From Macrostomum lignano (lineage: Eukaryota): 64,000 nt of DNA. The DNA is taken from assembly GCA_002269645.1 (NCBI GenBank), contig NIVC01001600.1:1-64000 (forward strand). The letters are read 5' to 3'. How positions within the stretch are numbered: the stretch's first letter is position 1; each line of letters begins with the position of its first letter. Below the pieces are notes generated by a model. The model was not told the origin of the DNA and ran no database searches. It saw only the letters and a program-made list of their open reading frames with translations. This document shows positions 1,321 through 62,365 of the stretch, piece by piece. The translations under genes were made by a program, and so were the position numbers.

Positions 1321-1350
1321 TGAAAATAAAACAACCTTCTCTGCTTGTTT
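1321..1350 (+). repeat. 30-bp direct repeat, left copy (candidate TSD of LINE copy 1)
   Basis: tgaaaataaaacaaccttctctgcttgttt is identical at 12901-12930; identity stops on both sides. Confidence 0.75.
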
Positions 1351-1499
1351 TGTAGGGCCTCTTTTTGCTTGTTTTGTAGCCTCTCCGGTGACAAGCAAGC
1401 ACTTGACAACAAGCTATAATCGTTATCCACAGTGTGGGGCGACGTATACCTACTTGTCAATTTCAAACTTACTCACTTGGGTCGTTACAATCTCCTGGC

Positions 1500-1715
1500 G
1501 ACTGGCGGCTCTCCTGGCGACTGGCGGCTCTCTGACGGCACTCGGCTCTCGGCTCGGCTTCTGGCTCGGCTCGGCTCGGCTCGGCTCGACCAGCGGCTCG
1601 ACCAGGCTCGGCGACTCGGCTAGGCGGTCCGGCGCGGCGGCGGCGGCGCGACTAGGCGGCGCGGCTCGGTGACGCAGCCAGCGGCGGCTCGGCAACGGCT
1701 CGTCGACTCGGCCAC
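1500..1715. repeat. GC-rich (GGCTC)n/(GGC)n low-complexity tract
   Basis: Repeated cggctcggct units visible directly. Confidence 0.8.
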
Positions 1716-3201
1716 GGCTTTGTTGTTAAACGGGGGTGGGAAGCTTTGCTACCCGCGGATCAGCCCTGGGAGGGGCTCTGCCGCAGAGGGCACTGCCAAG
1801 GGCACAGATAAGACTGTGTACCCGAGATACCCGAAACACCAATTTAGTTGGGCCCCAGCTTAAAGCTAGGGAAAGGGCGAGGGACTTCAAGCCTATGGTA
1901 CAAGACACCGCCAAACCAACAGTGGAATCAGGGACGGTGCTAGGACCGAATCCACCCAGACCATCCCCCCAGCCAGCAAGTCTTTTGGGTGTGCGCAGAG
2001 AAATTTGAAAACGAAAAGTTTGGGATACTACTGAAAGCGGTCCAAGTGAGGAACTACTCCTAAACCTTGGAAATGGCTTAAACTATTGGAGCGAGTCTGG
2101 GCAGCTAATTTACCAAGAGCGATCCTATACAGCACCCGTCAACTGTAGGTCTCGAGCCTCAAGGCTTTTCACTACCCAGCTCTATTTTGGAGTGAGTCTG
2201 GAAGGCTTGTATCCGAGGGGGAGACTCCAGGCGGGAAGACCGTTCACCTCTATTGCTGCCAACCCAAGGGCATCGCCTATCCAGCTCATTATTGGGGGCC
2301 AGGCCAAGGGGTCGGGAGAAGAGGCACCCAGGGCAAGAGGACTCCGGACTCAGCCGGTTGTCCCCGGTACGGGACGAACATCCTTCCCAGGACACCAATC
2401 CACTGTCAGGATGAGAGCCAGAGACACGCAAGCAGGGACCTTACAGCAGGAGCCAGGAGATGGACCCGAGGACAGGGCAAGATGGACCGGGCGAGGGCAG
2501 AGCTCATAACTCCAGAGAAATTGGATTTGGCTCAAGGCCTAATTAAGCTAAAACTAGATAAAAGCAGGGGATAAAACCGCGCTGGGATGCCAGCCCAGAA
2601 AAAAAGAATGGCAGTGGGGAGGAGCACCATAGCCCTAAAGCAGGCAGCTTGCCGGCCTGCAGCCCGGGTGCTCAGCCTCAGGGCTGGCATGCTACTGGGT
2701 CTACCGTACACCTTTGTGAATAGGTCTTTCTTTCCTGCAGGGCGGGTTCGACCGGGGGCTCAGTCCCGTCCTAGCCACACTGCAGTCCAGAGAACCTACT
2801 CACTCCGGGCCCCCCCCCCTAAACCAAGGCCGAGGCCAAAAAAATGGTTAGAAATAAGAATAGGGTTTAGTATTTGTAATGGGCACAGCCCCTCCGGGGC
2901 GGACCCTTAAGAATTGGCTAGGCCAATCGGATTGCGCACAACCCTTAGACAAGCTGCCAGAGAGACAGCCAGGGTAAAAACAGTCAGAGGCTTCGCTCAG
3001 CGGCTTCCTCATCGGCCGGCCGGTCTCGCGCGAATCTGCTCCTAAAGCGACAGGCCAGGATAGCTTAAGGACTTATCTTGTATTTAGTCTACTTTGACCT
3101 ACTATCAGTAGTATTTTTTAAGTTTTATAAGTTTTATTATTAATAGTTTTATATTCTAAGGATTTTTTCTTGTAAAATAGGCCACTGTTTTATTAAGGTC
3201 A

Positions 3202-5392
3202 ATGAACGTTGAGTGTAACAGCAAACGCAGTGCCCGCGACACGGACTCACCTCCGATTGCGAACTCAAAAAAAGCCAATCACCGAGACTCAGCTGGTCCA
3301 AGCCGAAGATCCGAACCTAAGACCATGCTGTCTCCATCAAACGCGCCGCTGCCCGAGACGCCTCCGCAAACCGGCACGTCCAAAGGTGAGCGGGCTGAGC
3401 CTTTGCCTCCCCCTAAAAGGGACAGTTTAGAGGTTAGAAAAGAACATGGTAAAACAACTATAATACGAATTCCAATAGCTGACAAGACTGATGAGAAAAC
3501 TGTCACATTGCCAAACAACAGCAACATCTGCTACTACCCGGTTGCTCTTAAGAGCTCGGAAAATCAAATACTCAAAATACTAACCGACGAAATCCAGGCC
3601 AAAAGCCTTTCACCATCTCACAAAAGGCCGTCCTGAAGCCCGCAAAATTGTATGGTTCAGGCCAGAATATAGCTACGGGGAACTAAGATTCCGGCCAATG
3701 ACGACTGGCACCCGTTGGTTACTAGTCTTGCTACTTGGCTGAGCGCTGAGTTTGGTCTACCCGTCTTCAACTCATGCCTCGTAAATTATTACAAAGATGG
3801 GTCCGTGCACATTCCTTGGCACTCAGACGATGAAGACGAACTAGGGGCTAATCCGACCATAGCCTCTATCTCTATTGGTGCCGCACGTGACTTCCACTTA
3901 CGAACCAAAGGCTCCACCAACATCGCTTGGTCCCAAAAACTCGCCAGTGGTTCTCTGCTGGTAATGGGGGGTGCGACACAGGCACACTTCCAGCACGCCG
4001 TCCTTAAGGACCTAAAAGTCAAAGAGGCAAGAGTAAATCTAACATTCAGGCTAACGTATGATAGCAGAATCCCACCTGATCCTGCTCCTGCTTCTGCTCT
4101 TGCAAACCCTTGCGTGCAGCCTCTTGACAACGATATCACCTGCGATCTGGACGACGAAAATTCGGTTCGTCGCAGAGCAGAGCAAGAAGCCGAAAATCTG
4201 AAAAAGATCAGATCACGTTCGAACAGCTGCACTTCGGGGCACAAATCAAGCACTCAGCAATCTCAAACAGCTAACCAGCTCACTGGCTCTCAGCAGTCAG
4301 CCACTCAGTCTAGCACCAAACAACACACTCAATCAGGCACTCAGCAACATTCAACAAACACTCAGCAGGCACACTCTGTCAAATCAGCCATCAGGTACAC
4401 TACAGTCAGCCACTCAGTCTAGCACTCTGCCGAAGCACTCAGCAACTCTGCAACCACATGCAAACAATCAGCAGACACTTCAGACACTCAGCAATCAGGC
4501 GACCAAACTCAACCACCTAACAACTACAAGCTGCCAGCTACTCAGCAACCTAACATTCACCAATCTAACCAATCTAGCCAACTAAACTCTACAACTCTAA
4601 ACTACCATCCTAAAACTAATAATACTCAAAAATCTACTAACTCAGCACCTGTCATCTTTGAAATCGACCAAGAAGGCAAAGATCCCATCAAATTCGAATG
4701 GTTTCTGAAAACAAATTTCCCAGACGTTCGCATCAGGTCGGTTAAGGACCTATACCATAGCTCCGGCTACATCGTGATTCCAGATCACCCTAAGGACTTC
4801 AACACACTATTAACAGCTATTCTCAAAATAAATAAAATTAATAACCACGAAGTCACGCGACGCACAGCAGCCAAAAGGCCAATAAGACAAGGAGATGATC
4901 AGGCGCGTGCTCCACTAAAATCACCAACAACGTACTCGTTTATCGTAAAACATGTGCCAATCACCGTAGACGCACACATGCTAGCCAAACACTTGGCAGA
5001 CTCAGAGCAGCAACTACCAATTGACGGCGCTGTGCGCATTGTCTCTAGGGCAACTGGTGCACCTACTCCGCACATCCGCCTCTTCACTAAGAGCAAGGGC
5101 ACGATGGAAAGATGCATCCAGCATGGAGTCTACCTTGGTTACAGCAAATTTAAATGCGAAGAGTCTATTAATTTAGCTCCGGTAAAAGCAATCCAATGTA
5201 AAAAATGTCAGAGATTAGGGCATCATGAAAACAGATGCACAGCAACCTACAGGTGTAACAAATGTGCGGGAGATCACTATTCTGCAGACTGCCCGAAAGA
5301 AAGCAAATTTAAATGCGCAAACTGCGGCGAAAGAACACCCAGCTTACTCATATAGATGTAGTAAAGTAAAGAAGCGAACGAAATTGCCATTA
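3202..5392 (+). pseudogene. LINE ORF1 copy 1: AlkB dioxygenase + Q/S/T-rich linker + RRM-like + 3xCCHC (frameshifts near 3620, 4420, 5328)
   Basis: AlkB: PEARKIVWF..YSYGG, NSCLVNYYKDG, WHSDDE, HAV, RVNLTFR. C-terminal part: FIVKHVP, CKKCQRLGHHENRC, CNKCAGDHYSADC, CANCG-EH. Confidence 0.9.
3622..4050 (+). CDS. AlkB (ALKBH2/3-like 2OG-Fe(II) oxygenase) domain, copy 1
   Basis: HSD (3820-3828), distal H in HAV, RxNLTFR all present. Confidence 0.93.
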
Positions 5393-7975
5393 CCCGCCTG
5401 GATAGCCGATCGGTTGTCGTCGCGCCGTCGTCCGCATTGGTCCGCGTTTGGTGGTCGATTTCCGGACAAATGCAGCTTTTCGTCCGTATTCATCCGGTTT
5501 AAGCTGCCGGACAAAGTAGCGGGCCAGTTTCCGGATCAGAGCCGGACAAAGTGGTGATTTTTTTACTTAATTGGTCCATTTTAGTCCGGAATTATATCCG
5601 CTTGTTTACCCGGACAAAAACCGGATGAAGCGTCGGATGACTTTACGGATGACTAGCCGGATGAATTGTCACTGTCGTCCGAAAAGTCATCCGCATTTTA
5701 ATCCGGGCTGTCGCCCGCCTAACAACCGGACGAAGAGCGGATATGTTTCCGGGTGATAGTGGAGCACGTGGAATTGAATAGTGGAAAATGGCACCTTTCT
5801 CCTACTTGTATGCCCACAGTTTGTAACACATGTTCCAGAAACAGCAGCACAACGTGTTCTATTTCTTATGCTCCAAGTTCTACAGAAAAATATACTTCTC
5901 CGTATGACATTTCCCACGTTCTGATTTTGATGGAGACTTCGATGTTGTTCGATGCCTTCGCATCTTTTGCATGTGTGCAACACATTAGATAGTACACTAT
6001 GTTAGATAGGGATCATAGAGGTCTTGGAAACAGCGGGTATTGTTGGACAAAATTGGTCTCGTCCGAGTTGTTACTGAAATGCAGAAATTCAGAAACATGT
6101 CGTCCATTCTATACGTGGATAGATGAATAGGTCACACAGCAGATAGTGCTACAGTGAATATGCGCATCTAGACATCATAAACCAACCCAATCTCTTTCAG
6201 TACTGCACGACTCGCAAACTGCATGGACAATTCAGATTTACCGCGCGGTTACAGCGGAGGCAGTACATGCGAGAGTACATGCGGCAGCGTGCGTTGGCCA
6301 ATTCAAATAGTCGACAAGAAGGTTCGCGATCACCTCTGCGTCCAACCGCAGGAACTTCTGCAGATGTCGACTCCGGCGAAGTCCAGTCCGGCGGCGCAGG
6401 CACCAGTGGACTGCTGCAGTCGTCGCAGCTGCAAGCGGATCCGCCTCTACATCTACAGTATCTCGATCTCGAGATGAGCAGTCTGTATACCTGCCTATAG
6501 ACAATCCAGAGTCCGACGACGGTGGCGCACAGGCCGATGGCCGCAATGGGGACCCGGTGTCGAGCTCTGACAGCACTTCGGACGGGGATTCTTCCTCTAG
6601 TGGTGAGTCCCAGTCAGAGAGTTGGCTTATCGTGGATTGTGGATCCATCCCAATGGCTCATGTTTGATACTTTTGTGTTACCTGCACGTTGCACTCACAC
6701 TGTCCACCGAACACATGCGCACTACGCTCACCACACACAATATATTCCTCCCAGGTTCGCAGTCTGTTGACGGCCAGAGCACAGACTCCGACAACGACGA
6801 GGACGTCCCGGGGTTTCCAGGAGTCAATTGGCACGACGCTCTGCCCGTTTCGCTCGGAGAGGCGATTTGGGAGGTCAGCTCCTGCGCGAGGAACTGAACC
6901 TGACAGTTAGCGGGACGACAAGGCTGCTTTCACTACTGCACAGGCTAGTACCCGACAACCGCCTTCCTCAGCACGGACGAACATTGCGTGAAACTTTGAA
7001 GAAGAGGGGAACAATCTCGGGGTCGTCAACATGTTACACTGTCCGCAACGACTGTTATCTACATTCCGAGCAGCGCTGCGATCCAGGAAATTCTAATTGT
7101 GCGCACTGTACGTCGGAAAATGTGGCCAACTTCTGGTTATTCGACATACCTGCGCAGATCCGAACATTCGTTGAATCTCGCGGTCTTCTACAGAGCGTAA
7201 CATTTCCGATTGAACGGCTTGCACTGGACGAAGAGAAGCTGCACTTTGCCAACAGCGAACTGTACAAGTCGTTTCTCGAGAACATCGAACCCGAGACTCG
7301 GAGCGACCTTACATACACCATCTGTGCAGACGGATTTCCTCTTTTCTGCACTAGCAATGTCGAGGTGTGCCCCGTCTATCTGAGTATTAACGAAGTGCAC
7401 GAGCGGCTGAAGCTCCGATTCGTGATGAAGTGTGGCGTGTGGGCCGGCAAGAAAAAGGTCCATGCCGCCGCCTTTCTGCCAATCGTCGTAAATGCACTGA
7501 ATACTCTGCGCTTCGATGGTGTACAGTATATCGACAGCCTCGGGGTTCAGCGTCGATTGCATCTGCATCCGCTAATGGCGCTGTTCGACGCTCCAGCGAG
7601 AGCGGACGCTCTGTGCATGAAGCGTTTCTCGGCTATCTACGGATGCGAGAAGTGCTACATCCGGACATCATTGCATCCATCAGGCCATGGACGAGTCTAC
7701 GGCGTCGGGGTTACTGACGCGATGCTTAATCAGGCCAGACGTCTAGGATGCGTTCAGACTGTAGTGCGGTCGACCAGCGACACTCACACTCTCGCTGAGC
7801 AGCACGCACAGCAGGGTGGCGACATTCGGACTGACGTCCTCGGTGTCCGTGGCCTGTCACCGCTGTCTCGACTGCACGGGTTTGACTTTGTCCGCGGCTG
7901 TCCACCGTGTTTCCTGCACCAGTTGTGCTCCGGCCTGGTACGCAATATTTTGTACCAGCTGTTCCTCTGGTACGG
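5393..7975 (+). mobile_element. CACTA/EnSpm-like DNA transposon, left part (right end lost)
   Basis: Starts CCCGCC exactly where LINE ORF1 homology stops; dense CCGGAC/CCGGAT subterminal repeats 5460-5755; transposase downstream. Confidence 0.75.
6828..7975 (+). CDS. CACTA/EnSpm-type transposase (main exon, truncated by Gypsy remnant)
   Basis: ICADGFPLF..VCPVYLSINE, FDAPARA..KRFSAIYGCEKC, PPCFLHQLCSG motifs typical of animal EnSpm/Mirage-like transposases. Confidence 0.85.
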
Positions 7976-9812
7976 CCCTAGCGCTTGTGGGGACCAACGC
8001 CTGTTGATTCCAGGTCGTGCCGTCGCTCAGCCGGTACGCGGCGCCGGCCTTGGTCATGATCTGTAGCGGGCCGGACAGTCTCGTGGCCAGCTTGCCCTTC
8101 TTGATGGGCCGCCGCACTCGGACCCAATCGCCTGGTCGGAGGTCGCTGACTCGCGCCCGGCGGCGTAGGTCCGTGTAGCGCTTGGTCCGCTGTTGCCGGT
8201 CGTAGATGGTCTCGCGCAGTCGCCATCCTTCGTCCGTCTCATTGATGTCTTTGGGCGGCGCCAGGGCAGTCAGCATCGTCCGCATCGATCGCCCTAGCAT
8301 GAGCTCGGCGGGCTCCTGCCCGTCAGGCTGTGCGGCGTGCTCCGGTAGACCTCCAGGAACTGGGTGATGGCGTCGGACAGCGGCGTGCAGTCCTCCTTGG
8401 CCGCTCGAATGCTGCCAGCCACTTCCAGTTTGTCGAGCTCGGCCTCCACCAGCTGCTGCTCGATGACGGGCTTGTGCACGGCTCCGCTGCAGCAGCCGAT
8501 CTGCTCGCTAAGGGCCGCTGGAAACTGCCTCTCCAGCTGCTCCACGACGCTGTTCACCTCGCTGACGTCCTCGGAGAGGCTCACATGGAAACCGAGCTTA
8601 TCCATGAGGTCTCGGCCTGCGATGTTGTCGCCGTGCTTCGCGATGTAGAATAGGTGTTGCAGCGACCGGTTGTTGTGCTTAACGGGGACCACCGCTTGGC
8701 CCACGAGATCGATCAGCTTGCCGCCGTATGCGCGCAGCTTCATCGTTGTCGGCTGAGGTAGCACCTCGGTCAGGAGCGCGGCCGTGTCGGCGTTCAACAG
8801 TGACACCTTGGCGCCGCAGTCGATCAGAGTATTGACCGGCACCTCTGCTTGTCCGAACCGCAGCTGCGCACGGATCTCACCGTCTCCCTGCACGGCGTAT
8901 ATAGTGACCGCCTCGTCCGGGCCGTCCTGAGCCTGGCCGGTCACTTGGAGCGCCTTGCTCCGGCAGCAACGGCTGAAATGGTTCATTTTGCCGCAGCTGT
9001 TGCAGGACTGCCCCTTCGCTGGGCAGTTGCCGTCGCCGTGACTGCGTCCGCAGCGAGAGCAGGCCTTGGCGGCGGGTCGACTTTGCTGGCCTTTCTTAGC
9101 TGGCTCCGCCGCGCCGCTCCACTTCGCCTTTGGCTTCTGCGCCTGCCGGACCGCGTGCACGGGCTCCGTCTCCATCAGAGCCTGACAGCCCTTTGACGCC
9201 TTCTCGATGGTGACGGCGATGGCGAGGGCCCTCTCCAGCGTGAGAGTAGCCGCGTCTTCCGTCAGCAGTCGCTCTCGGATGCGAGCGCTGCCAGTCTTCT
9301 CTGCCAGTTGGTCTCTGATGAGCTGGTCTCGGAGATTTCCGTACTCGCAGGGCTCGGCCAGCTCCCTGAGCGCGGCCACGAAGGACTCTGCGTCTTCGCC
9401 GGGCAGCTGGTGTCGTTGGCGGAATCGGAAGCGAGCCACCATCACGTTGGGCTTCTCTCCGAAGATCCCGCCCGTCCAGCTTTGCCTTCGCCTCCTTGAA
9501 GGAATCTCCCTCCGTGAGTGCTTGTCTCGCCTTGGCAATGCGCTGGCCTTCGAATCCGAGCAGGTGGAGCAGCAGATTCCTCTTTGTGGGTTCCGCCTCG
9601 GATTGCCCCTCCGGCTCCCGAAACTGGGATGCCGTGTAGAAGAATTCGAACGCGTCCAGCCATCTTGGCCACGGGACTGCCGGTTGGCCGCTCACGGGAA
9701 GAAAAGGCGCTGGTGCTGGAAGGCTGGGTCCGCTCATCCTCGTCGCCAATGTGGTGTCTCAACAGACTAACACAGGAAAACACGAGTACGTGGCAGGTAA
9801 GACTTTTTTTGC
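7976..9812 (-). mobile_element. Gypsy (Mag-like) LTR retrotransposon remnant: partial 5' LTR, PBS, gag, protease, integrase C-terminus; RT/RNase H/IN core deleted
   Basis: Gag PxxPFL..WPRWLDAFE, RFRFRQRHQLPGE, CSRCGRSH/CNSCGKMNHFSRCC; protease LIDCGAKVSL; IN tail YRSTPHSLTG and LRPGDWVRV. Confidence 0.88.
9735..9748 (-). promoter_or_regulatory. Primer binding site complementary to tRNA-Ser(GCU) 3' end
   Basis: Minus strand reads ...CACCACA-T-TGGCGACGAGGATG: LTR end CA, 1-nt spacer, 14-nt match to the known tRNA-Ser(GCU) 3' end. Confidence 0.8.
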
Positions 9813-10039
9813 CGGGAAAAAGGTATGAGCTCCACTTAGGGCAACCCGCGCTTATATTTGATATTTAACAGTAAATTGTTACACGATCGATAAATTTAAC
9901 CGCCAAAATGTCACGTGATTAAAAATACGTTTCACAATACAATATACGAATAATTTATTAACTGCACTACTTAAAGTAGAGTAGTAAGAAAAAGTAAGAA
10001 AAGGTTAGTTAGACGAACGGCCCTTTTACGGGCTCCTAG

Positions 10040-12069
10040 TCACGACACAACACTTAGCAACCAACAGCTTCTCAGTTGTAGATTCTCCACACCTGAGGAC
10101 CTAGATAAAGCGGTTGATCTGCTAAATCAGTGCATTCATGACACCATTGAGGATGTTGTACCCAACCGGGACCCTAGGGAGCAGCTTCCCCCAGATATTA
10201 TTAACAAAATTAAGCATAGGAGGAAAATTAGAAAATTATTCAAAAAACTAGAATAGACGACTTCAGAGTTCAAGCCAATCAAGCAGCTAAAGAAATACGA
10301 AATGCCATACGTATGCATAGATATAGGAAATTCGAAGATCTATGCCACAAAATTGCTAAAACTAGTTACAAAAAAAACCCAAAAAATTTTGGATTGACAT
10401 CAAAAAGATGACAGGAGAAAGGTCCAAAATGATCAACTATCCCCTTCTAGTCTACAAGGATTCGCATGCCGAGACTGAGGCAGAAAAAGCTTCACTCTTC
10501 AGCGACTTTCTAAAAGATCAAATGCAATCTCACCCCAACCAAGACTCGCTTATCTACGAAAAAGTCAGCAAGTACAAAGATCATGAGATCTTCAAACCCC
10601 ATAAAAATATAATCGCGGCACTTTCATACCATAAAGAGCACGCGAACCCGATTGATCCAGATAAAGAAGATATCGAAAGCGATATCCTAAACATTACTGA
10701 CCAGGACGTGCTCTGGGAGAGCAGAAAACTTAGGTCAGGAGGAGCTCCCGGTCCGGATAGAATTCCTAACATGGTTTTGAAATATGGTCTCAGCCCGGAC
10801 TCCATCAGAGTGCTCGCAAAAATTTACAACTCTAGTTTTCTCATAGGATACTTCCCTAAACAATGGAAAAAGGCCATCATCAAGATGATCCCTAAACCAA
10901 ACAAATCCAAAAATCTCGTGGAAAGCTATAGACCCATCAGCCTAACCTCCTGTGTTGGTAAACTTTACGAGAAGATTCTAGCTAAAAACCTTAGAATTAT
11001 CTTAGAAAACCTAGGAATTATTAATGAGGAACAATGTGCCTACAGATTCGATCACTGCACATATGACAATATAGTAAGACTCACCGACGATGTGCTGAAA
11101 ATGCTTCAGTTGAGGCAGTACACGTTGGGGGTCTTCTTTGATGTCAAAGGAGCCTTCGATGGAGTCTGGCTGGACTACCTTAAATATAAAATCTGGAAAA
11201 GTAAAATCCCGCACAACATGACACGAATTATAGTTGGAGGAGCCCGGGGCGAGGTCTTTCAGCCAACGGCGGGTGTCCCGCAGGGTGGGGTGCTCTCGCC
11301 CCTGCTCTTTATCATCTTCGCTAGCTCTATACCCAAGCCCACTGACAGCAAGGTCCGCTTTAGTCAGTTCGCTGACGACTTAGCAGTATGGGCCTCTGCC
11401 AGAAAATCCACTATGTCCGCTAAAAGGCTTAACTCATACTTCATTGTCCTCAAAAAGTGGCTTGACAATTTGGGCATAGTCATCAATCCCTCCAAAAGTA
11501 AAGCCATTTCCTTTTTCAAAGCTAATGGGAACAAAACAGGTCCAGACGATCCTCCAATTAAACTTGGACAAGACAAAATCAAGTACTATGATTCCGTCAC
11601 CTTCCTAGGGATGGTTCTTGACAAACAGCTTAACTTTAGGGCCCATATCGACAAGGTAGCTTGGTCTTCGACTGCCAAAATGGCTGCGCTAGCTAGGATG
11701 GCTAAGAACTCCAGGATTTCGCAACTGGCTCTTCGCCTCATCTATAGATCTTACATTGAGAGCACAATGACTTACGGCGCTCCAGTGCTCATCAATCTAC
11801 TGGCATCCCTTGTCAACAAGTTACAAATTCTGCAAAATAAGGCTCTTCGCCTCTCTATAGATGCTCCGCCTTATACTAAAATCACATACTTACACCAGGT
11901 CACCAAGATGCCTATGGTTAAGGATCGACTCCTCAATCTTGCTAAAAAATGGTACAAAAAAGCCCTGGAGAGTGAAATCCATGGGTTCAAAAATGACACC
12001 AAAGAATAGGCCAGACCTGGGTTCAGGGTCCCCTTTACTACTAAACTCAGACAGATTACGCAAATGTGA
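10040..12069 (+). pseudogene. LINE ORF2: post-endonuclease linker + reverse transcriptase (Jockey-like, no RNase H); APE missing
   Basis: APGPDRI, YRPISLTSCVGKLYEK, FFDVKGAFDGVW, GVPQGGVLSPLL, QFADD, TFLGMVLD. Linker FSTPEDLDK..RDPREQLP matches 63190-63295. 36-bp deletion and premature TAG at 12007-12009 relative to the 54-56 kb copy. Confidence 0.92.
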
Positions 12070-12900
12070 TTCAATTTATAACTCGAGCGCCTCTGTCCGG
12101 GGTCGGGAATACTTACGATTCTATGTAATGCTGTGCTAATTACTTGACATTCAAAGTACAGTACCAATCACACTCTGTTTTAACGTTTACACCCTCTCAC
12201 AGTATTATCTTTTATACTTCTCTAACATGTTTTACATTATTCACCCAAAATGCTGTTTATTGTGGGGCCAGGTCCACTACTTATAATTATCACTAAGAAA
12301 GGATATCTGAATGCTGAACTTACCAGTTGGGCTTGCTTTGTTGGGATGCTGTTGCGTCCGGTTTGCCGATTAACAAAATTTGCAAAACCCTCACCTGTGG
12401 GTAGGGACCTCTCTACTTACGGTATTCTCCAAGTCCTCCCAGGGAATCCTTCGTTTTCGTAAGGTTAACTAACATAGGCAGGTTCCTATATCATAGCCGT
12501 GTCTAGCTACTCTCAATAGTAGTGAAGAAGCTGGCCTCCATTTTTAAACCAAAACACTCAAAACATTACTGCTTTGTGATTCATTGTACATATTTACACC
12601 CCAATATTTGTTTTAGTTTTATCAATCATATTTATTTATATTTATTTGTTTTACTCAATACTTCAACCATTTGCTTTAAATTGACTCTATATTGATTAAT
12701 TGTACTCTATTATTTGTTTTAAGTTTTTAAATGGCATTATTGTATTATTTATTAGAAAATATTTGTTTTATTTCTCCAACAAAATACTAAATGTATCGCT
12801 CAAACTGGAAACTAAAACAAATTAGTTGCGTAAGAGCCCTCCCCAGGGCTGATGCGCAGGGCCCTTGATAGCCCCAACTTACCAAATGAAAAAAATGAAA
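12070..12900 (+). other. LINE 3' UTR with terminal hairpin (12835-12850) and (AAATG)n tail
   Basis: Colinear with the reverse complement of 54411-55200; ends ccaaatgaaaaaaatgaaa. Confidence 0.85.
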
Positions 12901-12930
12901 TGAAAATAAAACAACCTTCTCTGCTTGTTT
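12901..12930 (+). repeat. 30-bp direct repeat, right copy (candidate TSD)
   Basis: Identical to 1321-1350 and immediately follows the LINE tail. Confidence 0.75.
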
Positions 12931-12996
12931 GGCAATCGCTTTTGTGAGAAACTTTTAGTAATTGAAGTTCAACCTTAAAATTTATTTACTGTATAA

Positions 12997-13230
12997 GGAA
13001 ACTTGAGGTCGTGGAGACCAAGAACTAGGGATCCTAATAGGGAAACTTGAGGTCGTGGAGACCAGAACTAGGGATCAGGTTAGGAAACTTGAGGTTGTGG
13101 AGACCAGAACTAGGGATCTGGTTAGGAAACTTGAGGTCGTGGAGACCCAAGATTAAGGATCTGAATAGGAAACTTGAGGTCGTGGAGACCCAAGAATAGA
13201 AACCGGAGTAGGGAGATCGAGATCGTACAG
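12997..13230 (+). repeat. 42-44-bp tandem repeat (5 copies + 1 degenerate) in an LTR-like segment
   Basis: ggaaacttgaggtcgtggagacc starts at 12997, 13041, 13083, 13125, 13168. Confidence 0.85.
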
Positions 13231-13667
13231 ATCCTAAGAAAACCGTACAGGCTTATAATAGACATTAGGTGTTGAGGGATTAGGCATTAGGGGAATAGAT
13301 TGGCTACTGCTGGACACCCTTGATCCTCGGAAAACGCTAGACTTTCGAACTGAATTAGGGAATTAGACAGTGTCTTACCGCTCGGGCACTACACGCTATT
13401 ACAAGGGTTCTAGGAAACCGTGTGAAATTAGAAATCTCTAGGAAAGAGTCATAGAGTAGGGCTGCCAACGCTACTCAAAGTAGATATATTAGTGACAATT
13501 TATAGGATAGAGAAGTTAGAACTAAAGAACTGCAGCAACTTGGTGAGATAATTTCAGTAGGAACCATAAGGGCTAGCACAATACTGTAGTAAGTTAGAGT
13601 GCATAGATCTGTACTACAGAAGAAAGATACTAAACATTAAATAAGTTACATATACAATGAACACGCG

Positions 13668-14887
13668 CACCTTTATTCCTTCTCCAAAGTCCAAGACAAT
13701 TTCGTATACATCCCGGAAGGATTCGTGCGAAACCGGTAGTTGCATAAAAACTCGCCTGTTGTTTCCCCTTTGGTCAGAAGAGCCGCCAACCGCGCCTGAT
13801 GGACACGGAGCACCCAGAGGTTGAAACTCAGTATCGCTCTGCTTAGCATTCGTGTACCAGTCAGTCAAAGTCGTAACCTCGGTGTCGTCCGAGTTGAGCC
13901 GAACTTCAGAGCAAGTACATCCAAGTACAACAGCGCCGGCGTACTCCTGTACTTTTGCTCGTCGTATCGACAAAATGTCGCCGACACTCCAATTGACAGC
14001 TTGATCGGAGGACGACCCCCAAAACGTGCAGGAGACAGAACGACAGGACTGGTCAACAAGAGTCACTTTAGCTACGTTTATTCGCTTCCCAGCCTTCGTC
14101 ATGACTTTCTCGGACTGCTGCAGTGTGTCGATTGCTCCAAGGACATCAACATTTCTAATAAAAGGCAATGAAGAGGGGACAATTTGAAAAGTATTTTAAA
14201 ACCTTAAAACGCTTTTTGAAGTTCATTTGAATCCTACCTACATCAATGGTCGAATGAATATAATGGACTGTTAGACTAGCCAACATAAAGGGATGAAGGC
14301 ATAGATTGGATTGCTAATCTAGTCAAAATAATTTATAAAAGCCGAACATACACTACAGTGCTACACGATTGCATGTACAATTCACATTGTCTATACTATT
14401 ATGTCTATTGTACATATAATAATATTGTATACTGTCTGTCTATACAATACATACAAGTAGACAGATACAATGCAACTCACCCTTGCAGGCGTACGTTTTG
14501 AAGGTCGCTTATTCCCGTATAGTTACACGCCCGTTCAATAACAGTCGAAACTTCATTGCTTCGATATATTGATCCCTTGGAGTCAACTGAAAGAGACACC
14601 TCCATAGGATTGTTCGTTCAGTTGTATCTCGGATCCGAAGTCTTTACCATACCGCCGGCTACGCGAACAGCATCGGAAGTATTACAAACTTTCTCTCATC
14701 TGACTGACTCTCATCTCAGCCGAGTCGTCCACCAAGACGAATGAAAAAACTTCGCCACGAACATCGTTCTTCATGTAGGACCTGATCTCCTTCAACTCGG
14801 TCACAAGGCCAGTAACCGCTGTATTCATGTAGCCCAGTTCAGGCCGGAGATTTTAATCTTAATCTTCTTGGTGATTGTAGACGCCAT
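13668..14887 (-). pseudogene. RPA70 (RPA1)-like two-OB-fold gene, spliced, frameshifted in exon 1
   Basis: Exon 1: VTGLVTELKEIRSY..RGEVFSFVLVDDSAEMR (DBD-A-like). Intron GTGAG (14480)..TAG (14155). Exon 2: NVDVLGAI..VTLVDQSCRSVSCTFWG..ILSIRRAKVQEY..WY (DBD-B-like). Confidence 0.75.
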
Positions 14888-15681
14888 TGTTGCTAAGTTG
14901 TTCAGTTTTAACAAAGTATAAACAAAACTTAGAAAATAGAAAGAGCTTCTAGAAATTTTGCAGTGCAAAATACTTCAGTAGAAATAGCAGGTTAAAAATC
15001 ACAATTTGCAATACATTTTGACTTAAAAAGTCAAGCCGACACCCCAATCACCAGCAGTCAACCCACGCCACTAAACAGCCAATCAGAATGCAGATACCCC
15101 TCCCTCCCCTGTCTGCAATCTCTTCGCTTCCAGACTAAATCGACTGGGTGAGTGGGCTCTGGACCTTGTGGCGTGATCTCGCGACGCTAATTGAACTCCC
15201 ACGGCCAACCCCTCTCAACGTTATCTGCGACTTATCGTTTTTCACACTCATGAAAAGCAGCACAAACTTTCTTAGTCATTTATCCAGTTCATCTGAACTT
15301 GTCTGTGTTTACTCCATTTTCATTTTGAAAGTTTTGTGTAGCCAATGTTTGGCTTGGAGCTTAACTGACAACACTCCAAGGGCTAGTACGCACTGTTGAT
15401 TTTGGCTGGCGTTTGTTCATCAGAAATCCCCACAAGTTATGATTGAGGATATTTACATAATTCGGATTTCTCGGAGAGTAGAAACAGAATAGGGAAAGTA
15501 GCCTTGGGTATAGATCTAGACCACATGTAACACTAAGTGTGAGCGAGCTGGCTACCTCGTGAGTTGAGCTGCGCAACTCATGGAAATTGTACTGAAAATA
15601 ATTAAGTGTTAAAGGCGGCTTTGTTTTATTTCAGCATGTTTAGTTGACTGCTATGAGAAACTAATTGAATCAGTTTGAACC

Positions 15682-16385
15682 GAGTCTCTCTTCTATATAA
15701 CTTCTTCTATGTAACTGAATCTCTATATAACTGAGTCTCTATATAACTGAGTCCCTATAGACTTAGGTATGGAGCCAATGACAACATTGAGGATTAAAGC
15801 TTGAGTGGGGTATAAATGATCAAAAAAGTAAAATAGGTTAAAGTAAAGACTAAAAGGCGAAAGTAAACACACAAATACAGACGCCGAGGTTAGGGTTTAT
15901 TTTTGCACCTTTGAGGCTTGTACAATAAATATGCTTTGATTTAGGATTATGAAAATGAACATCTCTAATTCCCACGTGCTGAGTACCACCCCCATTCTGC
16001 ATTCTACGTGGCCACCACATCCATAATTCCCACTTGTTGAGTTGAGTGCAATTGCTCATCTGCTCCCCACAGAGCCACCACAAATAACTACAAAATACAA
16101 CCACATTGCGCAATGCTTACAGCTCTTTTGTGCGGCTTAAGTAAACCCCACTTTTGCCGAAATGATGAGTAGATATTATTCAGCGTTTTTTTAATATAAC
16201 AACAAACCAGAAGCAGGGGACGGCAACTAATAGGAGAGCTTTCCAAAGAATTCTACAAAGTTTATTCCTAAGTCTATAGAGACTCAATTAAATAGAGACT
16301 CAGTTATATAGAGACTCAGTTATATAGAGACTCTGTTATATAGAGACTGTTATATAGAGACTGTCTTATATAGAGACTCTGTTGC
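15682..16385. repeat. Inverted arrays of a 16-bp unit (GAGACTCAGTTATATA) flanking a ~500-bp spacer
   Basis: Left arm 15682-15767 is the reverse complement of the right arm 16267-16385; a third array lies at 22070-22190. Confidence 0.8.
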
Positions 16386-17022
16386 TTTTTGAGCGGGTTG
16401 AGATCAAGCTAGTCATCATATGTACACAGGTGTTAAGAGTCGCCGGGGCCGAAACTCTTGCTTCAGCTCCGTTGCCAAGCGGCGCGGCCTGCTCACTGGT
16501 GGGCGCGGCTGCTGCAGACCGGTATATATATATATACTCGCAGAAAACTCAAGACCTCTGCACTCAGTCATAGTCACTCGGAACATTCTTTATTCCCAGA
16601 CATTCCCAGACTAAAAAACAAAGCATGCACGGCTATTTTCTGCTGTACATTTTCATCTCTAGCGTCTTCACCGAGTATAGGTAAGTATTTATTATATACT
16701 TCTTTAATTTTTGTTAAAAGGAGGCATTAGTACAAAATTGTATATTATCAGAAGAGACTGTATTGGATCTTATTCCTTCTTTTTATAATTAACCTAGCCT
16801 AGAAGAGGAAGCATTTCTATTTTTTAAAAATTATGTGACATGTTCTGCGTTCTTATTCGTGTTTAACTTTACGAATATGACAGGTCACGACCCTCTATTT
16901 CGTGTGAACTTAACGACTAAACGTAACGGCCAAATGCATTTCGAGCTTGATGCCAAAATTTATGTTCTGATTGCCAAAGTAGCTTTCTGGGCTATTATCA
17001 AGATATTTATGTTGGTAATAAG

Positions 17023-25978: not shown

Positions 25979-26259
25979 TAAGGACATCTTTGCCTGATGT
26001 CTCTCCAGGATCAGCAGATGGCGGCTCTGCCTGCAGCCAGCCTCTGGCAGCGTGTTCTGACCTGAAATATGACATAAACAACTTGGCACTTTTAAGCATT
26101 CCCAAGCCAAACAGGACTAATGAAAAAACTGTAACTCTACTGCAAAACTGCAACATCACTTATGCGCCGAACGCGTTAAAAAGCTCAGAAACCACTCTCT
26201 TCAACATAATAATGAAAGACATCGCTCCAAGTGCCTACCACCACCACTCAAACGGAAAA

Positions 26260-26682
26260 CCGGAGGCCCGTCAGATCGCCTGGTTTGGGCCCAGTTACAC
26301 CTACGGTGGATCAAAAATCGAGGCCAATGACAACTGGCATGCTGCAATAGTCCGACTAGTCACGTGGCTCCACCTCGAATACAAACTGCCACTGTTCAAT
26401 TCCTGCCTAGTTAATTTTTATAAAGACGGCAACATCGGTATTCCATGGCACTCTGACGATGAAAAGGAACTTGGAGAGGATCCGATCATCGCCTCAGTGT
26501 CACTCGGAGCCGCCCGAGACTTTTAAGTTCGCTCAAAATCTTCTCCAACGAACATAGTATTTTCGCAAAAGCTAAGCAGCGGCAGCCTCTTAATAATGAG
26601 CGGTGGTACTCAGCGTTATCTACAACATACCGTACCAAAAGATCCTAGATGCAAGGAAATGCGAATTAACCTAACATTCCGA
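26260..26682 (+). CDS. AlkB (ALKBH2/3-like) domain, copy 2 (single nonsense codon)
   Basis: PEARQIAWFGPSYTYGG, NSCLVNFYKDG, WHSDDE, QHTVP, RINLTFR. Confidence 0.93.
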
Positions 26683-36090: not shown

Positions 36091-36238
36091 CAGAATTTTG
36101 TCCTATTGTTTTATTAGTACATAAGCCCAGAATTAAAATGAGAATTCGATTCCTAATCCCACTCCCTAAGAATTCTTTTCATTTTACAGGATTCGTCCCT
36201 TGCTTATTGGCCACCCCGAGGGGGGCGCTAGATTGCTA

Positions 36239-62321: not shown

Positions 62322-62365
62322 GCACTGAGAAATCTGAAAATTAATTACGAATTAAAGCCCTTCGT

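What the first reader, a model, noticed from the sequence alone, without database searches (positions are those of the whole stretch)
3202..12900. AlkB-ORF1 upstream of a Jockey-like RT: the LINE context of the demethylase
Seen: ORF1 with AlkB-linker-RRM-3xCCHC, then (after nested insertions) the post-APE linker, RT and tailed 3' UTR on the same strand. This is the only copy in the window showing AlkB-ORF1 and RT colinear. Established: RRM + CCHC ORF1 proteins coat LINE RNA in cis. Inference: the dioxygenase would be loaded onto the element's own RNP.
Basis: partly seen in the sequence, partly recalled or inferred. Interest (0 to 1): 0.85.

Follow-up and report, generated by a model that had tools for sequence, protein, structure and literature searches.

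The report
LINE retrotransposon carrying an AlkB demethylase
A flatworm LINE retrotransposon has an ALKBH3-like methyl-removing enzyme fused to its RNA-coating protein, conserved across diverged families; no paper found here reports this for LINEs, and it suggests the element cleans methyl marks off its own RNA.

Summary
A perfect 30-bp target-site duplication (1321-1350 and 12901-12930) brackets the whole block. The AlkB-ORF1 and the RT with its tailed 3' UTR therefore come from one full-length LINE insertion (1351-12900). That copy later decayed: frameshifts, one stop, an insert in the 5' UTR, and about 4.65 kb of foreign DNA replacing about 1.5 kb (ORF1 C-terminus plus the APE endonuclease).

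An intact relative in Macrostomum lignano (L001) has a 21-bp duplication, a 938-aa ORF1 (AlkB, linker, two RRMs, three CCHC) and a 950-aa APE+RT ORF2. A second complete element (L004, organism unknown) has the same layout. RTs of AlkB-bearing elements group together (93% bootstrap); their nearest relatives have the same ORF1 without AlkB.

The AlkB domain is closest to ALKBH3. It keeps every catalytic residue in all copies and is the most constrained part of ORF1.

Most likely function (inferred): demethylation of the element's own RNA, removing m1A/m3C that block reverse transcription.

"Jockey-like" holds only at superfamily level; the 3' end is a covarying stem-loop plus an (ATGAA)n-like tail, not poly(A).

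No report of AlkB in a LINE was found in the searchable library.

The parts
1321..1350 (.). Left copy of the 30-bp target-site duplication, TGAAAATAAAACAACCTTCTCTGCTTGTTT.
   Evidence: It matches 12901-12930 exactly, 30 of 30 bases. It is the only long-range exact repeat of 24 bp or more in the window apart from two pairs that lie in other repeated sequence.
1351..1721 (+). Distal 5' UTR of the LINE: a unique leader followed by GC-rich (CGGCT)n-like repeats.
   Evidence: It starts directly after the duplication. The repeat region 1560-1720 resembles L001 9670-9750. Similarity of the first 150 nt to L001 is not significant.
1722..2987 (-). About 1.27 kb inserted into the 5' UTR. It is unidentified and carries the same 3' stem-loop motif on the minus strand (about 1755-1794).
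   Evidence: It is absent from the L001 5' UTR; homology resumes at 2988. The motif hit is and is included in the covariation count.
2988..3201 (+). Proximal 5' UTR: an AT-rich leader running up to the ORF1 ATG.
   Evidence: Local alignment to L001 9762-9997 gives 157 of 194 identical, score 125 against a shuffle maximum of 35.
3202..5395 (+). ORF1 remnant, corresponding to residues 1 to about 730 of the intact 938-aa ORF1. Layout: N-terminal tail, AlkB domain, Q/S/T-rich linker, RRM1, RRM2, three CCHC knuckles. It is decayed by frameshifts near 3605, 3700, 5335 and 5360, and by a stop at 4420-4422.
   Evidence: tblastn with L001 ORF1 residues 1-717 gives 57% identity.
3481..4062 (+). AlkB-type Fe(II)/2-oxoglutarate dioxygenase domain. 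It keeps HxD...H and RxNxTxR.
   Evidence: Pfam PF13532, E 6e-29. The best solved relative of the intact ORF1 is ALKBH3, E 4e-24. Catalytic columns are conserved.
4063..4650 (+). Low-complexity Q/S/T/N-rich linker, containing the in-frame stop at 4420-4422.
   Evidence: Direct reading. It is internally repetitive: 4294-4395 resembles 4403-4499.
4651..4863 (+). RRM1 (beta-alpha-beta-beta-alpha-beta fold).
   Evidence: Coordinates were mapped from the AlphaFold2 model of the copy at 27223-27954 (pLDDT 86; mapping). The top Foldseek matches are tandem-RRM proteins, E about 1e-6.
4933..5163 (+). RRM2.
   Evidence: Same model and search as RRM1.
5197..5360 (+). Three Cys-Cys-His-Cys zinc knuckles. 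The third is split by a frameshift.
   Evidence: Motifs read directly. A profile of this region matches retroviral nucleocapsid and AIR2 knuckles, E 1e-6.
5396..10045 (.). Foreign DNA that replaces about 1.5 kb of the LINE (ORF1 C-terminus plus the APE domain). It includes an unassigned 412-aa ORF (6828-8066, + strand) and, on the minus strand, LTR-retroelement-like gag/protease ORFs (8294-9749) and an integrase-tail-like ORF (7857-8300).
   Evidence: It has no similarity to L001 ORF1 or ORF2. Only weak Pfam hints were found: Asp_protease_2 at 0.18 and SH3_Tf2-1 at 0.014. No other copy exists in the window.
10053..12009 (+). ORF2 remnant: the post-APE linker, the RT domain (about 10888-11616) and the C-terminal region, corresponding to residues 266-946 of the intact ORF2. 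There is a frameshift near 10245, then an open frame from 10408 to 12009.
   Evidence: tblastn gives 64-74% identity. Pfam RVT_1 scores E 3e-35.
12010..12900 (+). 3' UTR, with a conserved stem-loop at 12827-12858 and an AAATG/ATGAA-type tail at about 12884-12900.
   Evidence: The same 3' end is found in the second copy (54421, minus strand) and in L001. The fold has a z-score of -3.9. Of 11 pairs, 100% are paired and 5 show compensatory changes; 0 of 500 shuffles reach this.
12901..12930 (.). Right copy of the 30-bp target-site duplication. It directly abuts the tail.

Best explanation
WHAT IT IS (shown).
- Window 1351-12900 is one insertion of a roughly 7-kb APE-type non-LTR retrotransposon (LINE) of a Macrostomum-type flatworm genome.
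- It was full-length when it inserted and is flanked by a 30-bp target-site duplication. It is now dead.
- Its ORF1 protein is a fusion, in this order: an ALKBH3-like AlkB Fe(II)/2-oxoglutarate dioxygenase, a disordered linker of about 200 aa, two RRMs, three CCHC knuckles, and a C-terminal tail.
- ORF2 is APE+RT without RNase H.
- The 3' UTR ends in a conserved, covarying stem-loop plus an (ATGAA)n-like repeat.

HOW IT WORKS (inferred).
1. The element's transcript is translated.
2. ORF1p binds the RNA that encoded it through its RRMs and knuckles. This follows the cis preference established for LINE proteins.
3. That binding tethers many copies of the dioxygenase to the template.
4. The enzyme oxidatively removes N1-methyladenine and N3-methylcytosine from the single-stranded RNA. 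These Watson-Crick-face methyl groups stall reverse transcriptases.
5. ORF2p recognises the 3' stem-loop and repeat tail and can then copy the 7-kb template to full length during target-primed reverse transcription.
6. The tail repeat can anneal to the nicked target. Here the duplicated target begins with TGAAA, the same sequence as the tail unit.

My confidence in the identity and architecture is about 0.95. My confidence in the specific substrate and purpose is about 0.45.
For: One insertion:
- A perfect 30-bp direct repeat abuts the tail at one end. Its other copy lies 1.85 kb upstream of the ORF1 ATG.
- It is the only long-range exact repeat of 24 bp or more apart from two pairs that lie in other repeated sequence.
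- The intact relative L001 has a 21-bp duplication.

Architecture in intact copies:
- L001: ORF1 at 10001-12817, then ORF2 at 12843-15695, with Exo_endo_phos and RVT_1 domains.
- L004: ORF1 of 843 aa with AlkB, then a 948-aa APE+RT ORF2 that is 41% identical to the L001 ORF2.
- L006: AlkB-ORF1 followed by an APE ORF, where the contig ends.

AlkB domain:
- Pfam PF13532, E 6e-29 to 1e-31.
- The closest solved structure is ALKBH3 (E 4e-24), then ALKBH2 (E 4e-18).
- HxD...H and RxNxTxR are present in every complete AlkB domain compared (15 transposon-borne proteins; one, P0132, is a fragment cut before the second His).
- Between families, non-synonymous difference in AlkB is 0.10-0.11 while synonymous sites are saturated (about 0.8). 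This is tighter than the RRM/CCHC region (0.18-0.31) or the RT (0.23).

RNA-binding part:
- AlphaFold2 model at pLDDT 86 with two beta-alpha-beta-beta-alpha-beta modules.
- Foldseek top hits are all tandem-RRM proteins, E about 1e-6.
- The knuckles match nucleocapsid CCHC motifs, E 1e-6.

One lineage:
- RTs of AlkB-bearing elements group together in 93% of bootstraps.
- Their nearest relatives (L008, L009) have a homologous ORF1 without AlkB.

3' element:
- 11 pairs, 100% paired, 5 with compensatory changes, 0 of 500 shuffles as good.

Mechanistic background from papers:
- Viral AlkB domains repair m1A and m3C in RNA (PMC2553587).
- m1A, m3C and m1G interfere with reverse transcriptases. AlkB treatment removes m1A and m3C and improves cDNA capture by a non-LTR (R2) RT (PMC12140624).
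Against: - No biochemical or expression data exist. The substrate (m1A/m3C versus m6A, RNA versus single-stranded DNA) is inferred from the nearest solved relative and from the fusion partners.
- The window copy itself is non-functional and lacks the APE domain.
- The AlkB tree is unresolved. Type-I-ORF1 AlkBs alone group in 4% of bootstraps; all transposon-borne AlkBs against the sampled cellular ones group in 63%. The donor of the domain and the number of captures are therefore open.
- Similarity of the first 150 nt of the 5' UTR to L001 is not above chance.
- The RT clade could not be assigned against reference elements.
- The organisms behind L004, L006 and L007 are unknown.
- m6A promotes L1 retrotransposition in human cells (PMC7873242). 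Removal of methyl marks is therefore not self-evidently beneficial to a LINE.
Confidence: 0.6

Rival explanations
1. The adjacency is an artefact. On this view the AlkB-ORF1 piece and the RT piece are two independent LINE fragments that happen to lie on the same strand; a 5'-truncated RT fragment is the commonest kind of LINE insertion.
For: About 1.5 kb of LINE is missing between the two pieces, so this is not a clean nest. No duplication of 7 bp or more was found when the 5' end was assumed to lie near 3066 or 10050.
Against: - A perfect 30-bp duplication brackets 1351-12900. One copy lies exactly at the tail.
- Both halves diverge from L001 to a similar degree: 69% and 66% nucleotide identity.
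- Intact elements with this layout exist.
Confidence: 0.03
2. The domain is an m6A eraser. ORF1p would strip N6-methyladenosine from the element's RNA to escape reader-mediated decay or heterochromatin targeting, as proposed for the orchid Ty3/Gypsy AlkB.
For: - A retrotransposon-encoded AlkB with m6A demethylase activity in vitro is documented in orchids (PMC9289625).
- m6A is known to regulate retroelement RNAs (PMC7873242, PMC9289625).
Against: - Among solved structures only ALKBH3 and ALKBH2 reach E 0.01; ALKBH5 and FTO do not appear.
- The nearest AlkB-only proteins are bacterial repair-type AlkB and animal ALKBH3-like proteins.
- In human cells the m6A writer helps L1 and the eraser ALKBH5 suppresses it (PMC7873242).
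Confidence: 0.2
3. The enzyme acts on DNA. It would repair 1-methyladenine or 3-methylcytosine in the single-stranded cDNA or target DNA during integration, or reverse 3mC made as a by-product of DNA methyltransferases acting on transposon DNA.
For: - By my own knowledge, ALKBH3 and ALKBH2 are DNA repair enzymes, and ALKBH3 also acts on RNA.
- M. lignano is reported to retain DNMT1, DNMT3 and ALKB2 (PMC9246332).
Against: - The domain is fused to the RNA-coating protein, not to ORF2p, which handles the DNA.
- RRMs and CCHC knuckles bind single strands. This fits RNA, but it does not exclude single-stranded DNA.
Confidence: 0.12
4. The AlkB fold is no longer an enzyme. It would be a degenerate RNA-binding or scaffolding module, or the fusion would be a gene-model artefact that joins a host gene to a transposon.
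For: No activity data exist. Some public M. lignano models of these proteins are clearly chimeric or truncated (P0004, P0127).
Against: - All metal-binding and 2OG-binding residues are kept in every family.
- AlkB is the most constrained segment of ORF1.
- The fusion is one uninterrupted ORF in raw DNA of L001, L004 and L006. It also recurs in three separate copies in this window.
Confidence: 0.05

Closest known systems
Type I ORF1p LINEs of the Jockey superfamily (the Jockey lineage and some L2 and CR1 subgroups; Khazina & Weichenrieder classification; Metcalfe & Casane 2014, PMC4120745)
   Same: - Two RRMs directly upstream of three CCHC knuckles.
- A separate APE+RT ORF2 of about 950 aa without RNase H.
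- A modular ORF1 that gains N-terminal domains (PHD in subtype IC).
   Different: - An entire AlkB dioxygenase plus a long disordered linker sits at the N-terminus. None of the 448 elements in that survey has it (the word AlkB does not occur in the paper).
- The host is a flatworm.
- The 3' end is a stem-loop plus a short repeat.
'Stringent-type' L2-clade LINEs such as eel UnaL2 and zebrafish ZfL2 (own knowledge)
   Same: A conserved 3' stem-loop followed by a short tandem-repeat tail, which in those elements is what the RT recognises. Here the stem covaries.
   Different: - There is no sequence or Rfam match to the UnaL2 3' element or to any other family.
- The ORF1 type differs.
- Recognition of the 3' end by ORF2p is not tested here.
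Esterase-bearing (Type IV) ORF1p of CR1/L2 LINEs, e.g. ZfL2-1 (PMC3905857)
   Same: It is the precedent for a genuine enzyme fold inside a LINE ORF1 protein.
   Different: - That enzyme is an SGNH-type esterase thought to act on lipids. This one is a nucleic-acid demethylase fold.
- One contig found here (L002) combines PHD, AlkB and an SGNH-like region in one ORF1.
Orchid Ty3/Gypsy elements with an AlkB/2-ODD ORF (Gypsy_Pa_2799; PMC9289625)
   Same: A retrotransposon that has captured an AlkB-family dioxygenase. RNA binding and demethylase activity were shown in vitro for that one.
   Different: - That element is a 25-kb plant LTR element, and the domain sits at the C-terminus of a separate extra ORF.
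- Its domain is described there as close to m6A demethylases.
- It is a recent acquisition restricted to one lineage. Here the host element is a LINE, the fusion is to the RNA chaperone itself, the type is ALKBH3-like, and the domain is conserved across families whose synonymous sites are saturated.
AlkB domains in replicases of plant Flexiviridae RNA viruses (PMC2553587)
   Same: A selfish RNA-based replicon carrying a repair-type AlkB. Those domains remove m1A and m3C from RNA, which protects the template of an RNA-templated polymerase.
   Different: Those are plus-strand RNA viruses of plants with the domain embedded in the replicase polyprotein. This is an animal retrotransposon with the domain on the RNA-coating protein.
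ALKBH3 (human; PDB 2iuw, 8jnr)
   Same: It is the best solved match: E 4e-24 across about 140 residues. The WHSDDE, QH and RVNLTFR motifs are identical or nearly so.
   Different: - Identity is only about 40%, and the domain is equally distant from bacterial AlkB (mean 38% to each).
- Orthology is not established.
- ALKBH3 is a free-standing cellular enzyme.

Membership tests
APE-type non-LTR retrotransposon (LINE) | Reverse transcriptase of the non-LTR class | tested here: met
   Pfam RVT_1 scores E 3e-35 on window 10408-12009. The intact relative's ORF2 matches the solved L1 ORF2p and R2 RTs at about E 1e-14.
APE-type non-LTR retrotransposon (LINE) | Apurinic-type endonuclease N-terminal to the RT in the same ORF | tested here: met
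   It is deleted from the window copy. It is present in the intact relatives L001, L004 and L006 (Exo_endo_phos and Exo_endo_phos_2) and in the window fragment 62416-63297.
APE-type non-LTR retrotransposon (LINE) | Insertion flanked by a target-site duplication, with the 3' tail at the junction | tested here: met
   A 30-bp perfect duplication in the window and a 21-bp one in L001.
Jockey superfamily/group (as defined in PMC4120745) | APE+RT ORF2 without RNase H, plus a separate ORF1 | tested here: met
   Pfam finds no RNase H in the L001 or L004 ORF2. More distant RT hits do carry PF00075.
Jockey superfamily/group (as defined in PMC4120745) | RT groups with the reference Jockey, CR1 or L2 clades in a phylogeny (RTclass1 or Repbase references) | not testable with these tools
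   No reference LINE sequences are available. The best database RTs are only 33-35% identical and carry no clade name.
Jockey clade in the strict sense | Confined to arthropods (PMC4120745); poly(A) 3' end (own knowledge) | tested here: not met
   The closest proteins come from the flatworm Macrostomum lignano. The 3' end is a stem-loop plus an (ATGAA)n-like repeat.
Type I ORF1p (Khazina & Weichenrieder) | [quoted passage not shown] | tested here: met
   - Two RRM folds in a model at pLDDT 86.
- Foldseek matches to tandem-RRM proteins at about E 1e-6.
- Knuckles match nucleocapsid CCHC motifs at E 1e-6.
- The RRMs are not detectable by Pfam sequence models.
AlkB family of Fe(II)/2-oxoglutarate dioxygenases | Sequence membership above the curated threshold | tested here: met
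   PF13532 scores 100-109 bits against a gathering score of 31.2.
AlkB family of Fe(II)/2-oxoglutarate dioxygenases | HxD...H iron triad and the RxNxTxR 2-oxoglutarate-binding motif | tested here: met
   All columns are conserved in the three window copies and in every complete AlkB domain compared from elsewhere (one fragment, P0132, is cut short).
AlkB family of Fe(II)/2-oxoglutarate dioxygenases | Oxidative demethylase activity | not testable with these tools
   This needs an enzyme assay.
ALKBH3 subfamily (orthology) | Groups with animal ALKBH3 to the exclusion of bacterial AlkB and ALKBH2 | tested here: inconclusive
   - ALKBH3 is the best solved match.
- The nearest AlkB-only proteins are bacterial (43-48% identity), with animal ALKBH3-like proteins at 40-42%.
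- The neighbour-joining tree is unresolved.

The most novel reading that the evidence does not exclude
Removal of RNA methylation is a recurrent, selectable need of retroelements. On this reading, a whole lineage of animal LINEs carries a cis-acting demethylase on its RNA chaperone to erase marks or lesions (m1A, m3C, possibly m6A) that would otherwise stop target-primed reverse transcription or flag the transcript for silencing.

The same enzyme fold has been captured in several other settings:
- LINEs with a different ORF1 type (L002).
- Probably a Penelope-like element (L007).
- An orchid LTR element (PMC9289625).
- Plant RNA viruses (PMC2553587).

This would make base methylation of transposon RNA a previously unrecognised layer of host-transposon conflict in animals.
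Probability: 0.4. Interest if true: 0.85.

Novelty: new variant of a known kind. Interest (0 to 1): 0.78.

Why it matters
LINE ORF1 proteins are regarded as RNA chaperones. The only enzyme fold described in them so far is an esterase.

A catalytically intact ALKBH3-like dioxygenase fused to the chaperone, held under strong purifying selection across deeply diverged families, has two implications:
- Methylated bases in the template RNA may limit LINE fitness enough to pay for about 200 extra codons.
- A concrete hypothesis becomes testable: m1A and m3C, or m6A, act as barriers to retrotransposition in animals.

It also links three separate observations, in plant RNA viruses, an orchid LTR element and now LINEs, into one convergent theme.

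A practical consequence follows for genome surveys. In flatworm genomes, surveys that score the presence of 'ALKB2/3' may be counting transposon copies rather than host genes.

Macrostomum lignano is a laboratory model, by my own knowledge with transgenesis and RNAi available, so the idea can be tested in vivo.

Tried and rejected
1. A target-site duplication assuming the 5' end lies at the start of the L001 similarity (about 3066), or at the start of the RT fragment (about 10050). No shared word of 7 bp or more was found. The real duplication lies 1.7 kb further upstream.
2. The large word-indexed protein search with the window RT, looking for near-identical ORF2s. The best hit was only 33-35% identical, because the M. 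lignano ORF2s were never annotated as genes.
3. RT clade assignment. No reference sequences are obtainable; the supplements of PMC4120745 hold only lists and logos. The question is left at superfamily level.
4. Pfam on the RRM region, the ORF1 C-terminus and the nested ORFs (6828-8066, 8294-9538, 9096-9749). Nothing was significant.
5. The first structure prediction, with a 5-sequence alignment, was unusable (pLDDT 47). It was repeated with 16 sequences and reached pLDDT 86.
6. RNAalifold on a raw MAFFT alignment of the 3' ends misaligned L001 and showed no covariation. A tighter alignment of 5 sequences did show it.
7. Rfam on the 3' UTR gave no hit.
8. An AlkB-domain tree to decide between single and multiple capture and to name the donor was unresolved.
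9. dN/dS could not be computed between families because synonymous sites are saturated. Raw proportions are reported instead.
10. Literature searches for AlkB together with LINE, ORF1, non-LTR, Penelope, Repbase or Macrostomum, across seven queries. No report of a LINE-borne AlkB turned up. Subscription journals and Repbase Reports are not covered, so prior description cannot be excluded.

Full report
**1. What is at the coordinates**

ORF1:
- On the + strand an ORF starts at ATG 3202.
- Read in three frames, one protein can be followed to about 5395 through four frameshifts (near 3605, 3700, 5335 and 5360) and one in-frame stop at 4420-4422.
- Pfam places a 2OG-Fe(II) oxygenase (AlkB) domain in it (PF13532, E 6e-29).
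- Downstream come a Q/S/T-rich low-complexity linker, a region that Pfam does not recognise, and three Cys-Cys-His-Cys knuckles.

ORF2 remnant and 3' end:
- Still on the + strand, 10408-12009 is an open 533-codon frame with a reverse transcriptase domain (RVT_1, E 3e-35).
- With one frameshift it extends back to 10053.
- It is followed by an 890-nt 3' UTR that ends in ...CCAAATGAAAAAAATGAAA at 12900.

The window is a graveyard of transposable elements. It holds:
- two more AlkB-ORF1 copies (25990-28275 and about 28737-30558), each about 50% identical in protein to the first;
- a second, 5'-truncated RT copy (54421-56247, minus strand, 86% nucleotide identity);
- a fragment with the ORF1 C-terminus and the APE domain (61815-63297).

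**2. The two halves are one insertion**

- The 30 bases directly after the tail (12901-12930, TGAAAATAAAACAACCTTCTCTGCTTGTTT) recur exactly at 1321-1350. The sequences on the outer and inner sides of the two copies are unrelated.
- A scan of all exact repeats of 24 bp or more shows this as the only long-range pair apart from two pairs that lie in other repeated sequence.
- This is the signature of a target-site duplication. The LINE inserted as one unit spanning 1351-12900.
- The duplicated target begins with TGAAA, the unit of the tail repeat. That fits priming by annealing of the tail to the nicked target (inference).
- The 5' UTR is therefore 1351-3201, interrupted by about 1.27 kb (1722-2987).
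  - The proximal part (2988-3198) aligns with the 5' UTR of the intact relative: 157 of 194 identical, score 125 against a shuffle maximum of 35.
  - The GC-rich repeat part also resembles the relative.
  - The first 150 nt do not align significantly.
- Between 5396 and 10045 lies foreign DNA: an unassigned 412-codon ORF and LTR-retroelement-like gag/protease and integrase-tail ORFs on the minus strand, with weak Pfam hints only.
- This foreign DNA replaces ORF1 residues from about 730 to 938 and ORF2 residues 1-265. The copy has therefore lost its APE domain, and the interior is an insertion plus a deletion rather than a clean nest.

**3. Intact relatives**

- The most intact window copy retrieves Macrostomum lignano proteins at 47-54% identity.
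- The genomic locus of one of them (L001, NIVC01001213.1) contains a complete element:
  - a 21-bp perfect duplication (9441-9461 and 16586-16606);
  - a 5' UTR of 539 nt;
  - ORF1 at 10001-12817 (938 aa);
  - a 25-nt spacer;
  - ORF2 at 12843-15695 (950 aa: Exo_endo_phos at 11-227, RVT_1 at 547-800, no RNase H);
  - a 3' UTR of about 890 nt ending in (AAATG)n.
- The window's ORF1 and ORF2 remnants are 57% and 64-74% identical to these proteins.
- An exhaustive HMMER search of 1.8 billion representative proteins found further AlkB+RRM+CCHC proteins at about 36% identity, from run-level assemblies of unknown organisms.
  - One contig (L004) carries the whole coding region: an 843-aa AlkB-ORF1, a small ORF, and a 948-aa APE+RT ORF2 that is 41% identical to the L001 ORF2. 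It has the same 3' stem-loop motif.
  - Another (L006) shows AlkB-ORF1 followed by the APE domain up to the contig end.
- The same search found homologous ORF1 proteins without AlkB. Their contigs (L008, L009) also carry APE+RT ORF2s.
- In a neighbour-joining tree of the RT region:
  - the AlkB-bearing elements (window, L001, L004) group together in 93% of 200 bootstraps;
  - the AlkB-less elements are their nearest neighbours, though that grouping has only 55-62% support;
  - elements with RNase H are distant.

**4. Anatomy of ORF1p**

AlkB domain (about 200 aa):
- Its best solved relatives are ALKBH3 (E 4e-24) and ALKBH2 (E 4e-18). No other AlkB subfamily reaches E 0.01.
- The nearest AlkB-only proteins in the 5.8-billion-protein set are bacterial AlkB (43-48% identity) and animal ALKBH3-like proteins (40-42%).
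- The iron ligands (HxD...H), the 2-oxoglutarate-binding RxNxTxR motif and the NxxxxxY motif are present in all three window copies and in every complete AlkB domain compared from elsewhere (one fragment, P0132, is cut short).

RRM and knuckle region:
- For the region between the linker and the knuckles, a 16-sequence alignment gave an AlphaFold2 model with mean pLDDT 86. It contains two beta-alpha-beta-beta-alpha-beta modules.
- The top 50 Foldseek matches in the PDB are all tandem-RRM proteins or complexes of them (Pub1, HuR, NONO, hnRNP A1, Sxl), at E about 1e-6. TM-scores are low because the two domains are oriented differently.
- A profile of the region matches retroviral nucleocapsid and AIR2 knuckles at E 1e-6.
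- The protein is thus a Type I ORF1p (two RRMs plus three CCHC, the layout of subtype IB/IC in PMC4120745) with an AlkB domain and linker added at the N-terminus.

**5. Selection**

- Between families, synonymous sites are saturated (proportion about 0.8). Non-synonymous differences are:
  - 0.10-0.11 in AlkB (copy 2 against copy 3; copy 1 against L001);
  - 0.18-0.31 in the RRM/CCHC region;
  - 0.23 in the RT.
- AlkB is the most constrained part of ORF1. That is expected only if its function mattered to the active lineages.
- The two RT copies in the window differ with dN/dS 0.18.

**6. 3' end**

- All copies end in a stem-loop followed by an (AAATG/ATGAA)n-type tail.
- Each stem-loop folds well below its shuffles (z-scores -3.1 to -4.0).
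- In an alignment of five examples, all 11 pairs are formed in every sequence. The five outer pairs all show compensatory double changes, and the inner AGCCC/GGGCT helix is invariant. None of 500 shuffles reaches these values. The structure was derived from these same sequences, so this count leans in its favour.
- No Rfam family matches.
- By my own knowledge, this resembles the 3' ends of 'stringent' L2-type LINEs, not the poly(A) of Jockey.

**7. How it most likely works**

Shown:
- the fusion;
- its conservation;
- the intact catalytic motifs;
- the single-strand-binding partner domains;
- the APE+RT partner ORF;
- target-site duplications of 21-30 bp.

Inferred:
- ORF1p coats its own RNA in cis and so concentrates the dioxygenase on the template.
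- Given the ALKBH3/AlkB-type sequence, the likeliest substrates are m1A and m3C.
- These bases stall reverse transcriptases. AlkB treatment removes them and improves cDNA yield even for a non-LTR (R2) RT (PMC12140624).
- Plant-virus AlkB domains are documented to repair exactly these lesions in RNA (PMC2553587).
- A 7-kb template copied in one pass would benefit.

Rivals:
- An m6A eraser that evades host marking, as proposed for the orchid Gypsy AlkB (PMC9289625). Against it: the subfamily affinity, and the finding that m6A helps human L1 (PMC7873242).
- Repair of single-stranded DNA intermediates.
- A non-catalytic role, which the conserved active site argues against.

**8. Comparison and membership**

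- It is an APE-type LINE: RT, APE in intact copies, target-site duplication and tail were all tested and met.
- It fits the Jockey superfamily in domain content.
- It fails the features of the Jockey clade proper (host, tail). The clade could not be tested phylogenetically.
- Its ORF1p is Type I with a new N-terminal enzyme module.
- The nearest precedents for the idea are the esterase ORF1p of CR1/L2 elements (PMC3905857), the orchid Gypsy AlkB ORF (PMC9289625) and Flexiviridae AlkB domains (PMC2553587).

**9. Novelty and caveats**

- Seven full-text searches found no description of AlkB in a LINE.
- A survey of 448 Jockey-superfamily ORF1s does not mention it (PMC4120745).
- I rate it a new variant of a known kind: a LINE with a new enzymatic ORF1 domain.
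- Weak points:
  - no functional data;
  - an unresolved AlkB tree;
  - unknown organisms for the non-Macrostomum contigs;
  - the identity of the window's organism rests on protein matches only.

**10. Broader hint**

- Two other contigs suggest further, possibly independent, captures:
  - L002 has an ORF1 with PHD, AlkB and an SGNH-like region, followed by a PHD-APE ORF2.
  - L007 has a 1012-aa AlkB protein followed by an ORF with weak RT and GIY-YIG matches, the Penelope-like combination.
- If confirmed, capture of AlkB by retroelements is recurrent.

Noticed in passing
window 25990-28275 and 28737-30558 (+): Two further AlkB-ORF1 copies belong to a different family: about 50% protein identity to the studied copy and 78% to each other in the AlkB domain. 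Copy 2 is 5'-truncated and has a single stop near 26524. The 5' UTR of copy 3 begins a few bases after the ORF1 stop of copy 2, so copy 3 appears to have inserted into copy 2. Copy 3 is itself cut off at 30558.
   Followed up: partly
window 61815-63297 (+): An isolated fragment carries the ORF1 C-terminal tail and the APE domain of a related LINE. It is 80% identical in protein to the L001 ORF2 (Exo_endo_phos_2, E 4e-11). This is the very segment that the studied copy lacks, but it comes from another family.
   Followed up: partly
window 54421-56247 (-): A 5'-truncated second copy of the same RT family shares 86% nucleotide identity and has the same 3' stem-loop and tail. dN/dS against the studied copy is 0.18, so the two derive from distinct active masters.
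   Followed up: partly
window 1722-2987 (motif at about 1755-1794, minus strand): The 1.27-kb insert in the LINE's 5' UTR carries, on the minus strand near its end, the same covarying stem-loop (inner helix AGCCC/GGGCT) as the LINE 3' ends. It has no other similarity to them. It is possibly a 5'-truncated relative or a SINE-like partner that uses the same 3' recognition element.
   Followed up: partly
L002 135-4162 (ERZ12295446 contig, organism unknown): A different LINE architecture also carries AlkB. ORF1 is 730 aa with a PHD finger, AlkB (E 1e-18) and a C-terminal region with a GDSN (SGNH-esterase-like) motif. It is followed by an ORF2 that begins with PHD + APE, and the contig ends before the RT.
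   Followed up: partly
L007 2120-7398 (SRR19430222 contig, organism unknown): A 1012-aa protein with an AlkB domain (E 5e-31) lies directly upstream of an ORF with weak RT (E 0.002) and GIY-YIG (E 0.002) matches. That pairing is characteristic of Penelope-like elements.
   Followed up: partly
L003 8001-10322 (ERZ25073835 contig, 113 kb): A 773-aa protein (P0005) has an AlkB domain at its C-terminus and an unrecognised 600-aa N-terminal part. Its context is unknown.
   Followed up: no
L004 4346-4717; L008 1988-2791: Small extra ORFs (123 and 267 aa, no Pfam hit on record) lie between ORF1 and ORF2 in two related LINEs. They are absent from the M. lignano element.
   Followed up: no
window 6828-8066 (+): A 412-codon ORF inside the foreign segment has no Pfam match, even at E 5, and no other copy in the window.
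   Followed up: partly
window 12996-13195 and 17061-18636: A tandem repeat of 43-44 bp units lies just 3' of the target-site duplication. A satellite-like array with a period of about 565 bp lies further on.
   Followed up: no
window 32110-32703 (-), 35738-36124 (+), 36870-37340 (-): Remnants of other transposons: Harbinger-like (HTH_Tnp_4 and DDE_Tnp_4, E 0.002), a GIY-YIG motif ORF (E 0.002, Penelope-like?), and a Tc1/Sleeping-Beauty-type HTH (E 2e-7).
   Followed up: partly
window 34001-36000: A local composition anomaly: GC 0.57 with a GC skew of -0.35, the strongest in the window. It overlaps the GIY-YIG-bearing ORFs.
   Followed up: no
literature (PMC9246332) versus the M. lignano proteins P0002-P0004 and P0133: Reviews list M. 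lignano as retaining ALKB2 together with DNMT1 and DNMT3. The genome holds many transposon-borne ALKBH2/3-like domains annotated simply as 'Fe2OG dioxygenase domain-containing protein'. Homology-based presence calls could be confounded by them. This is an inference only.
   Followed up: no
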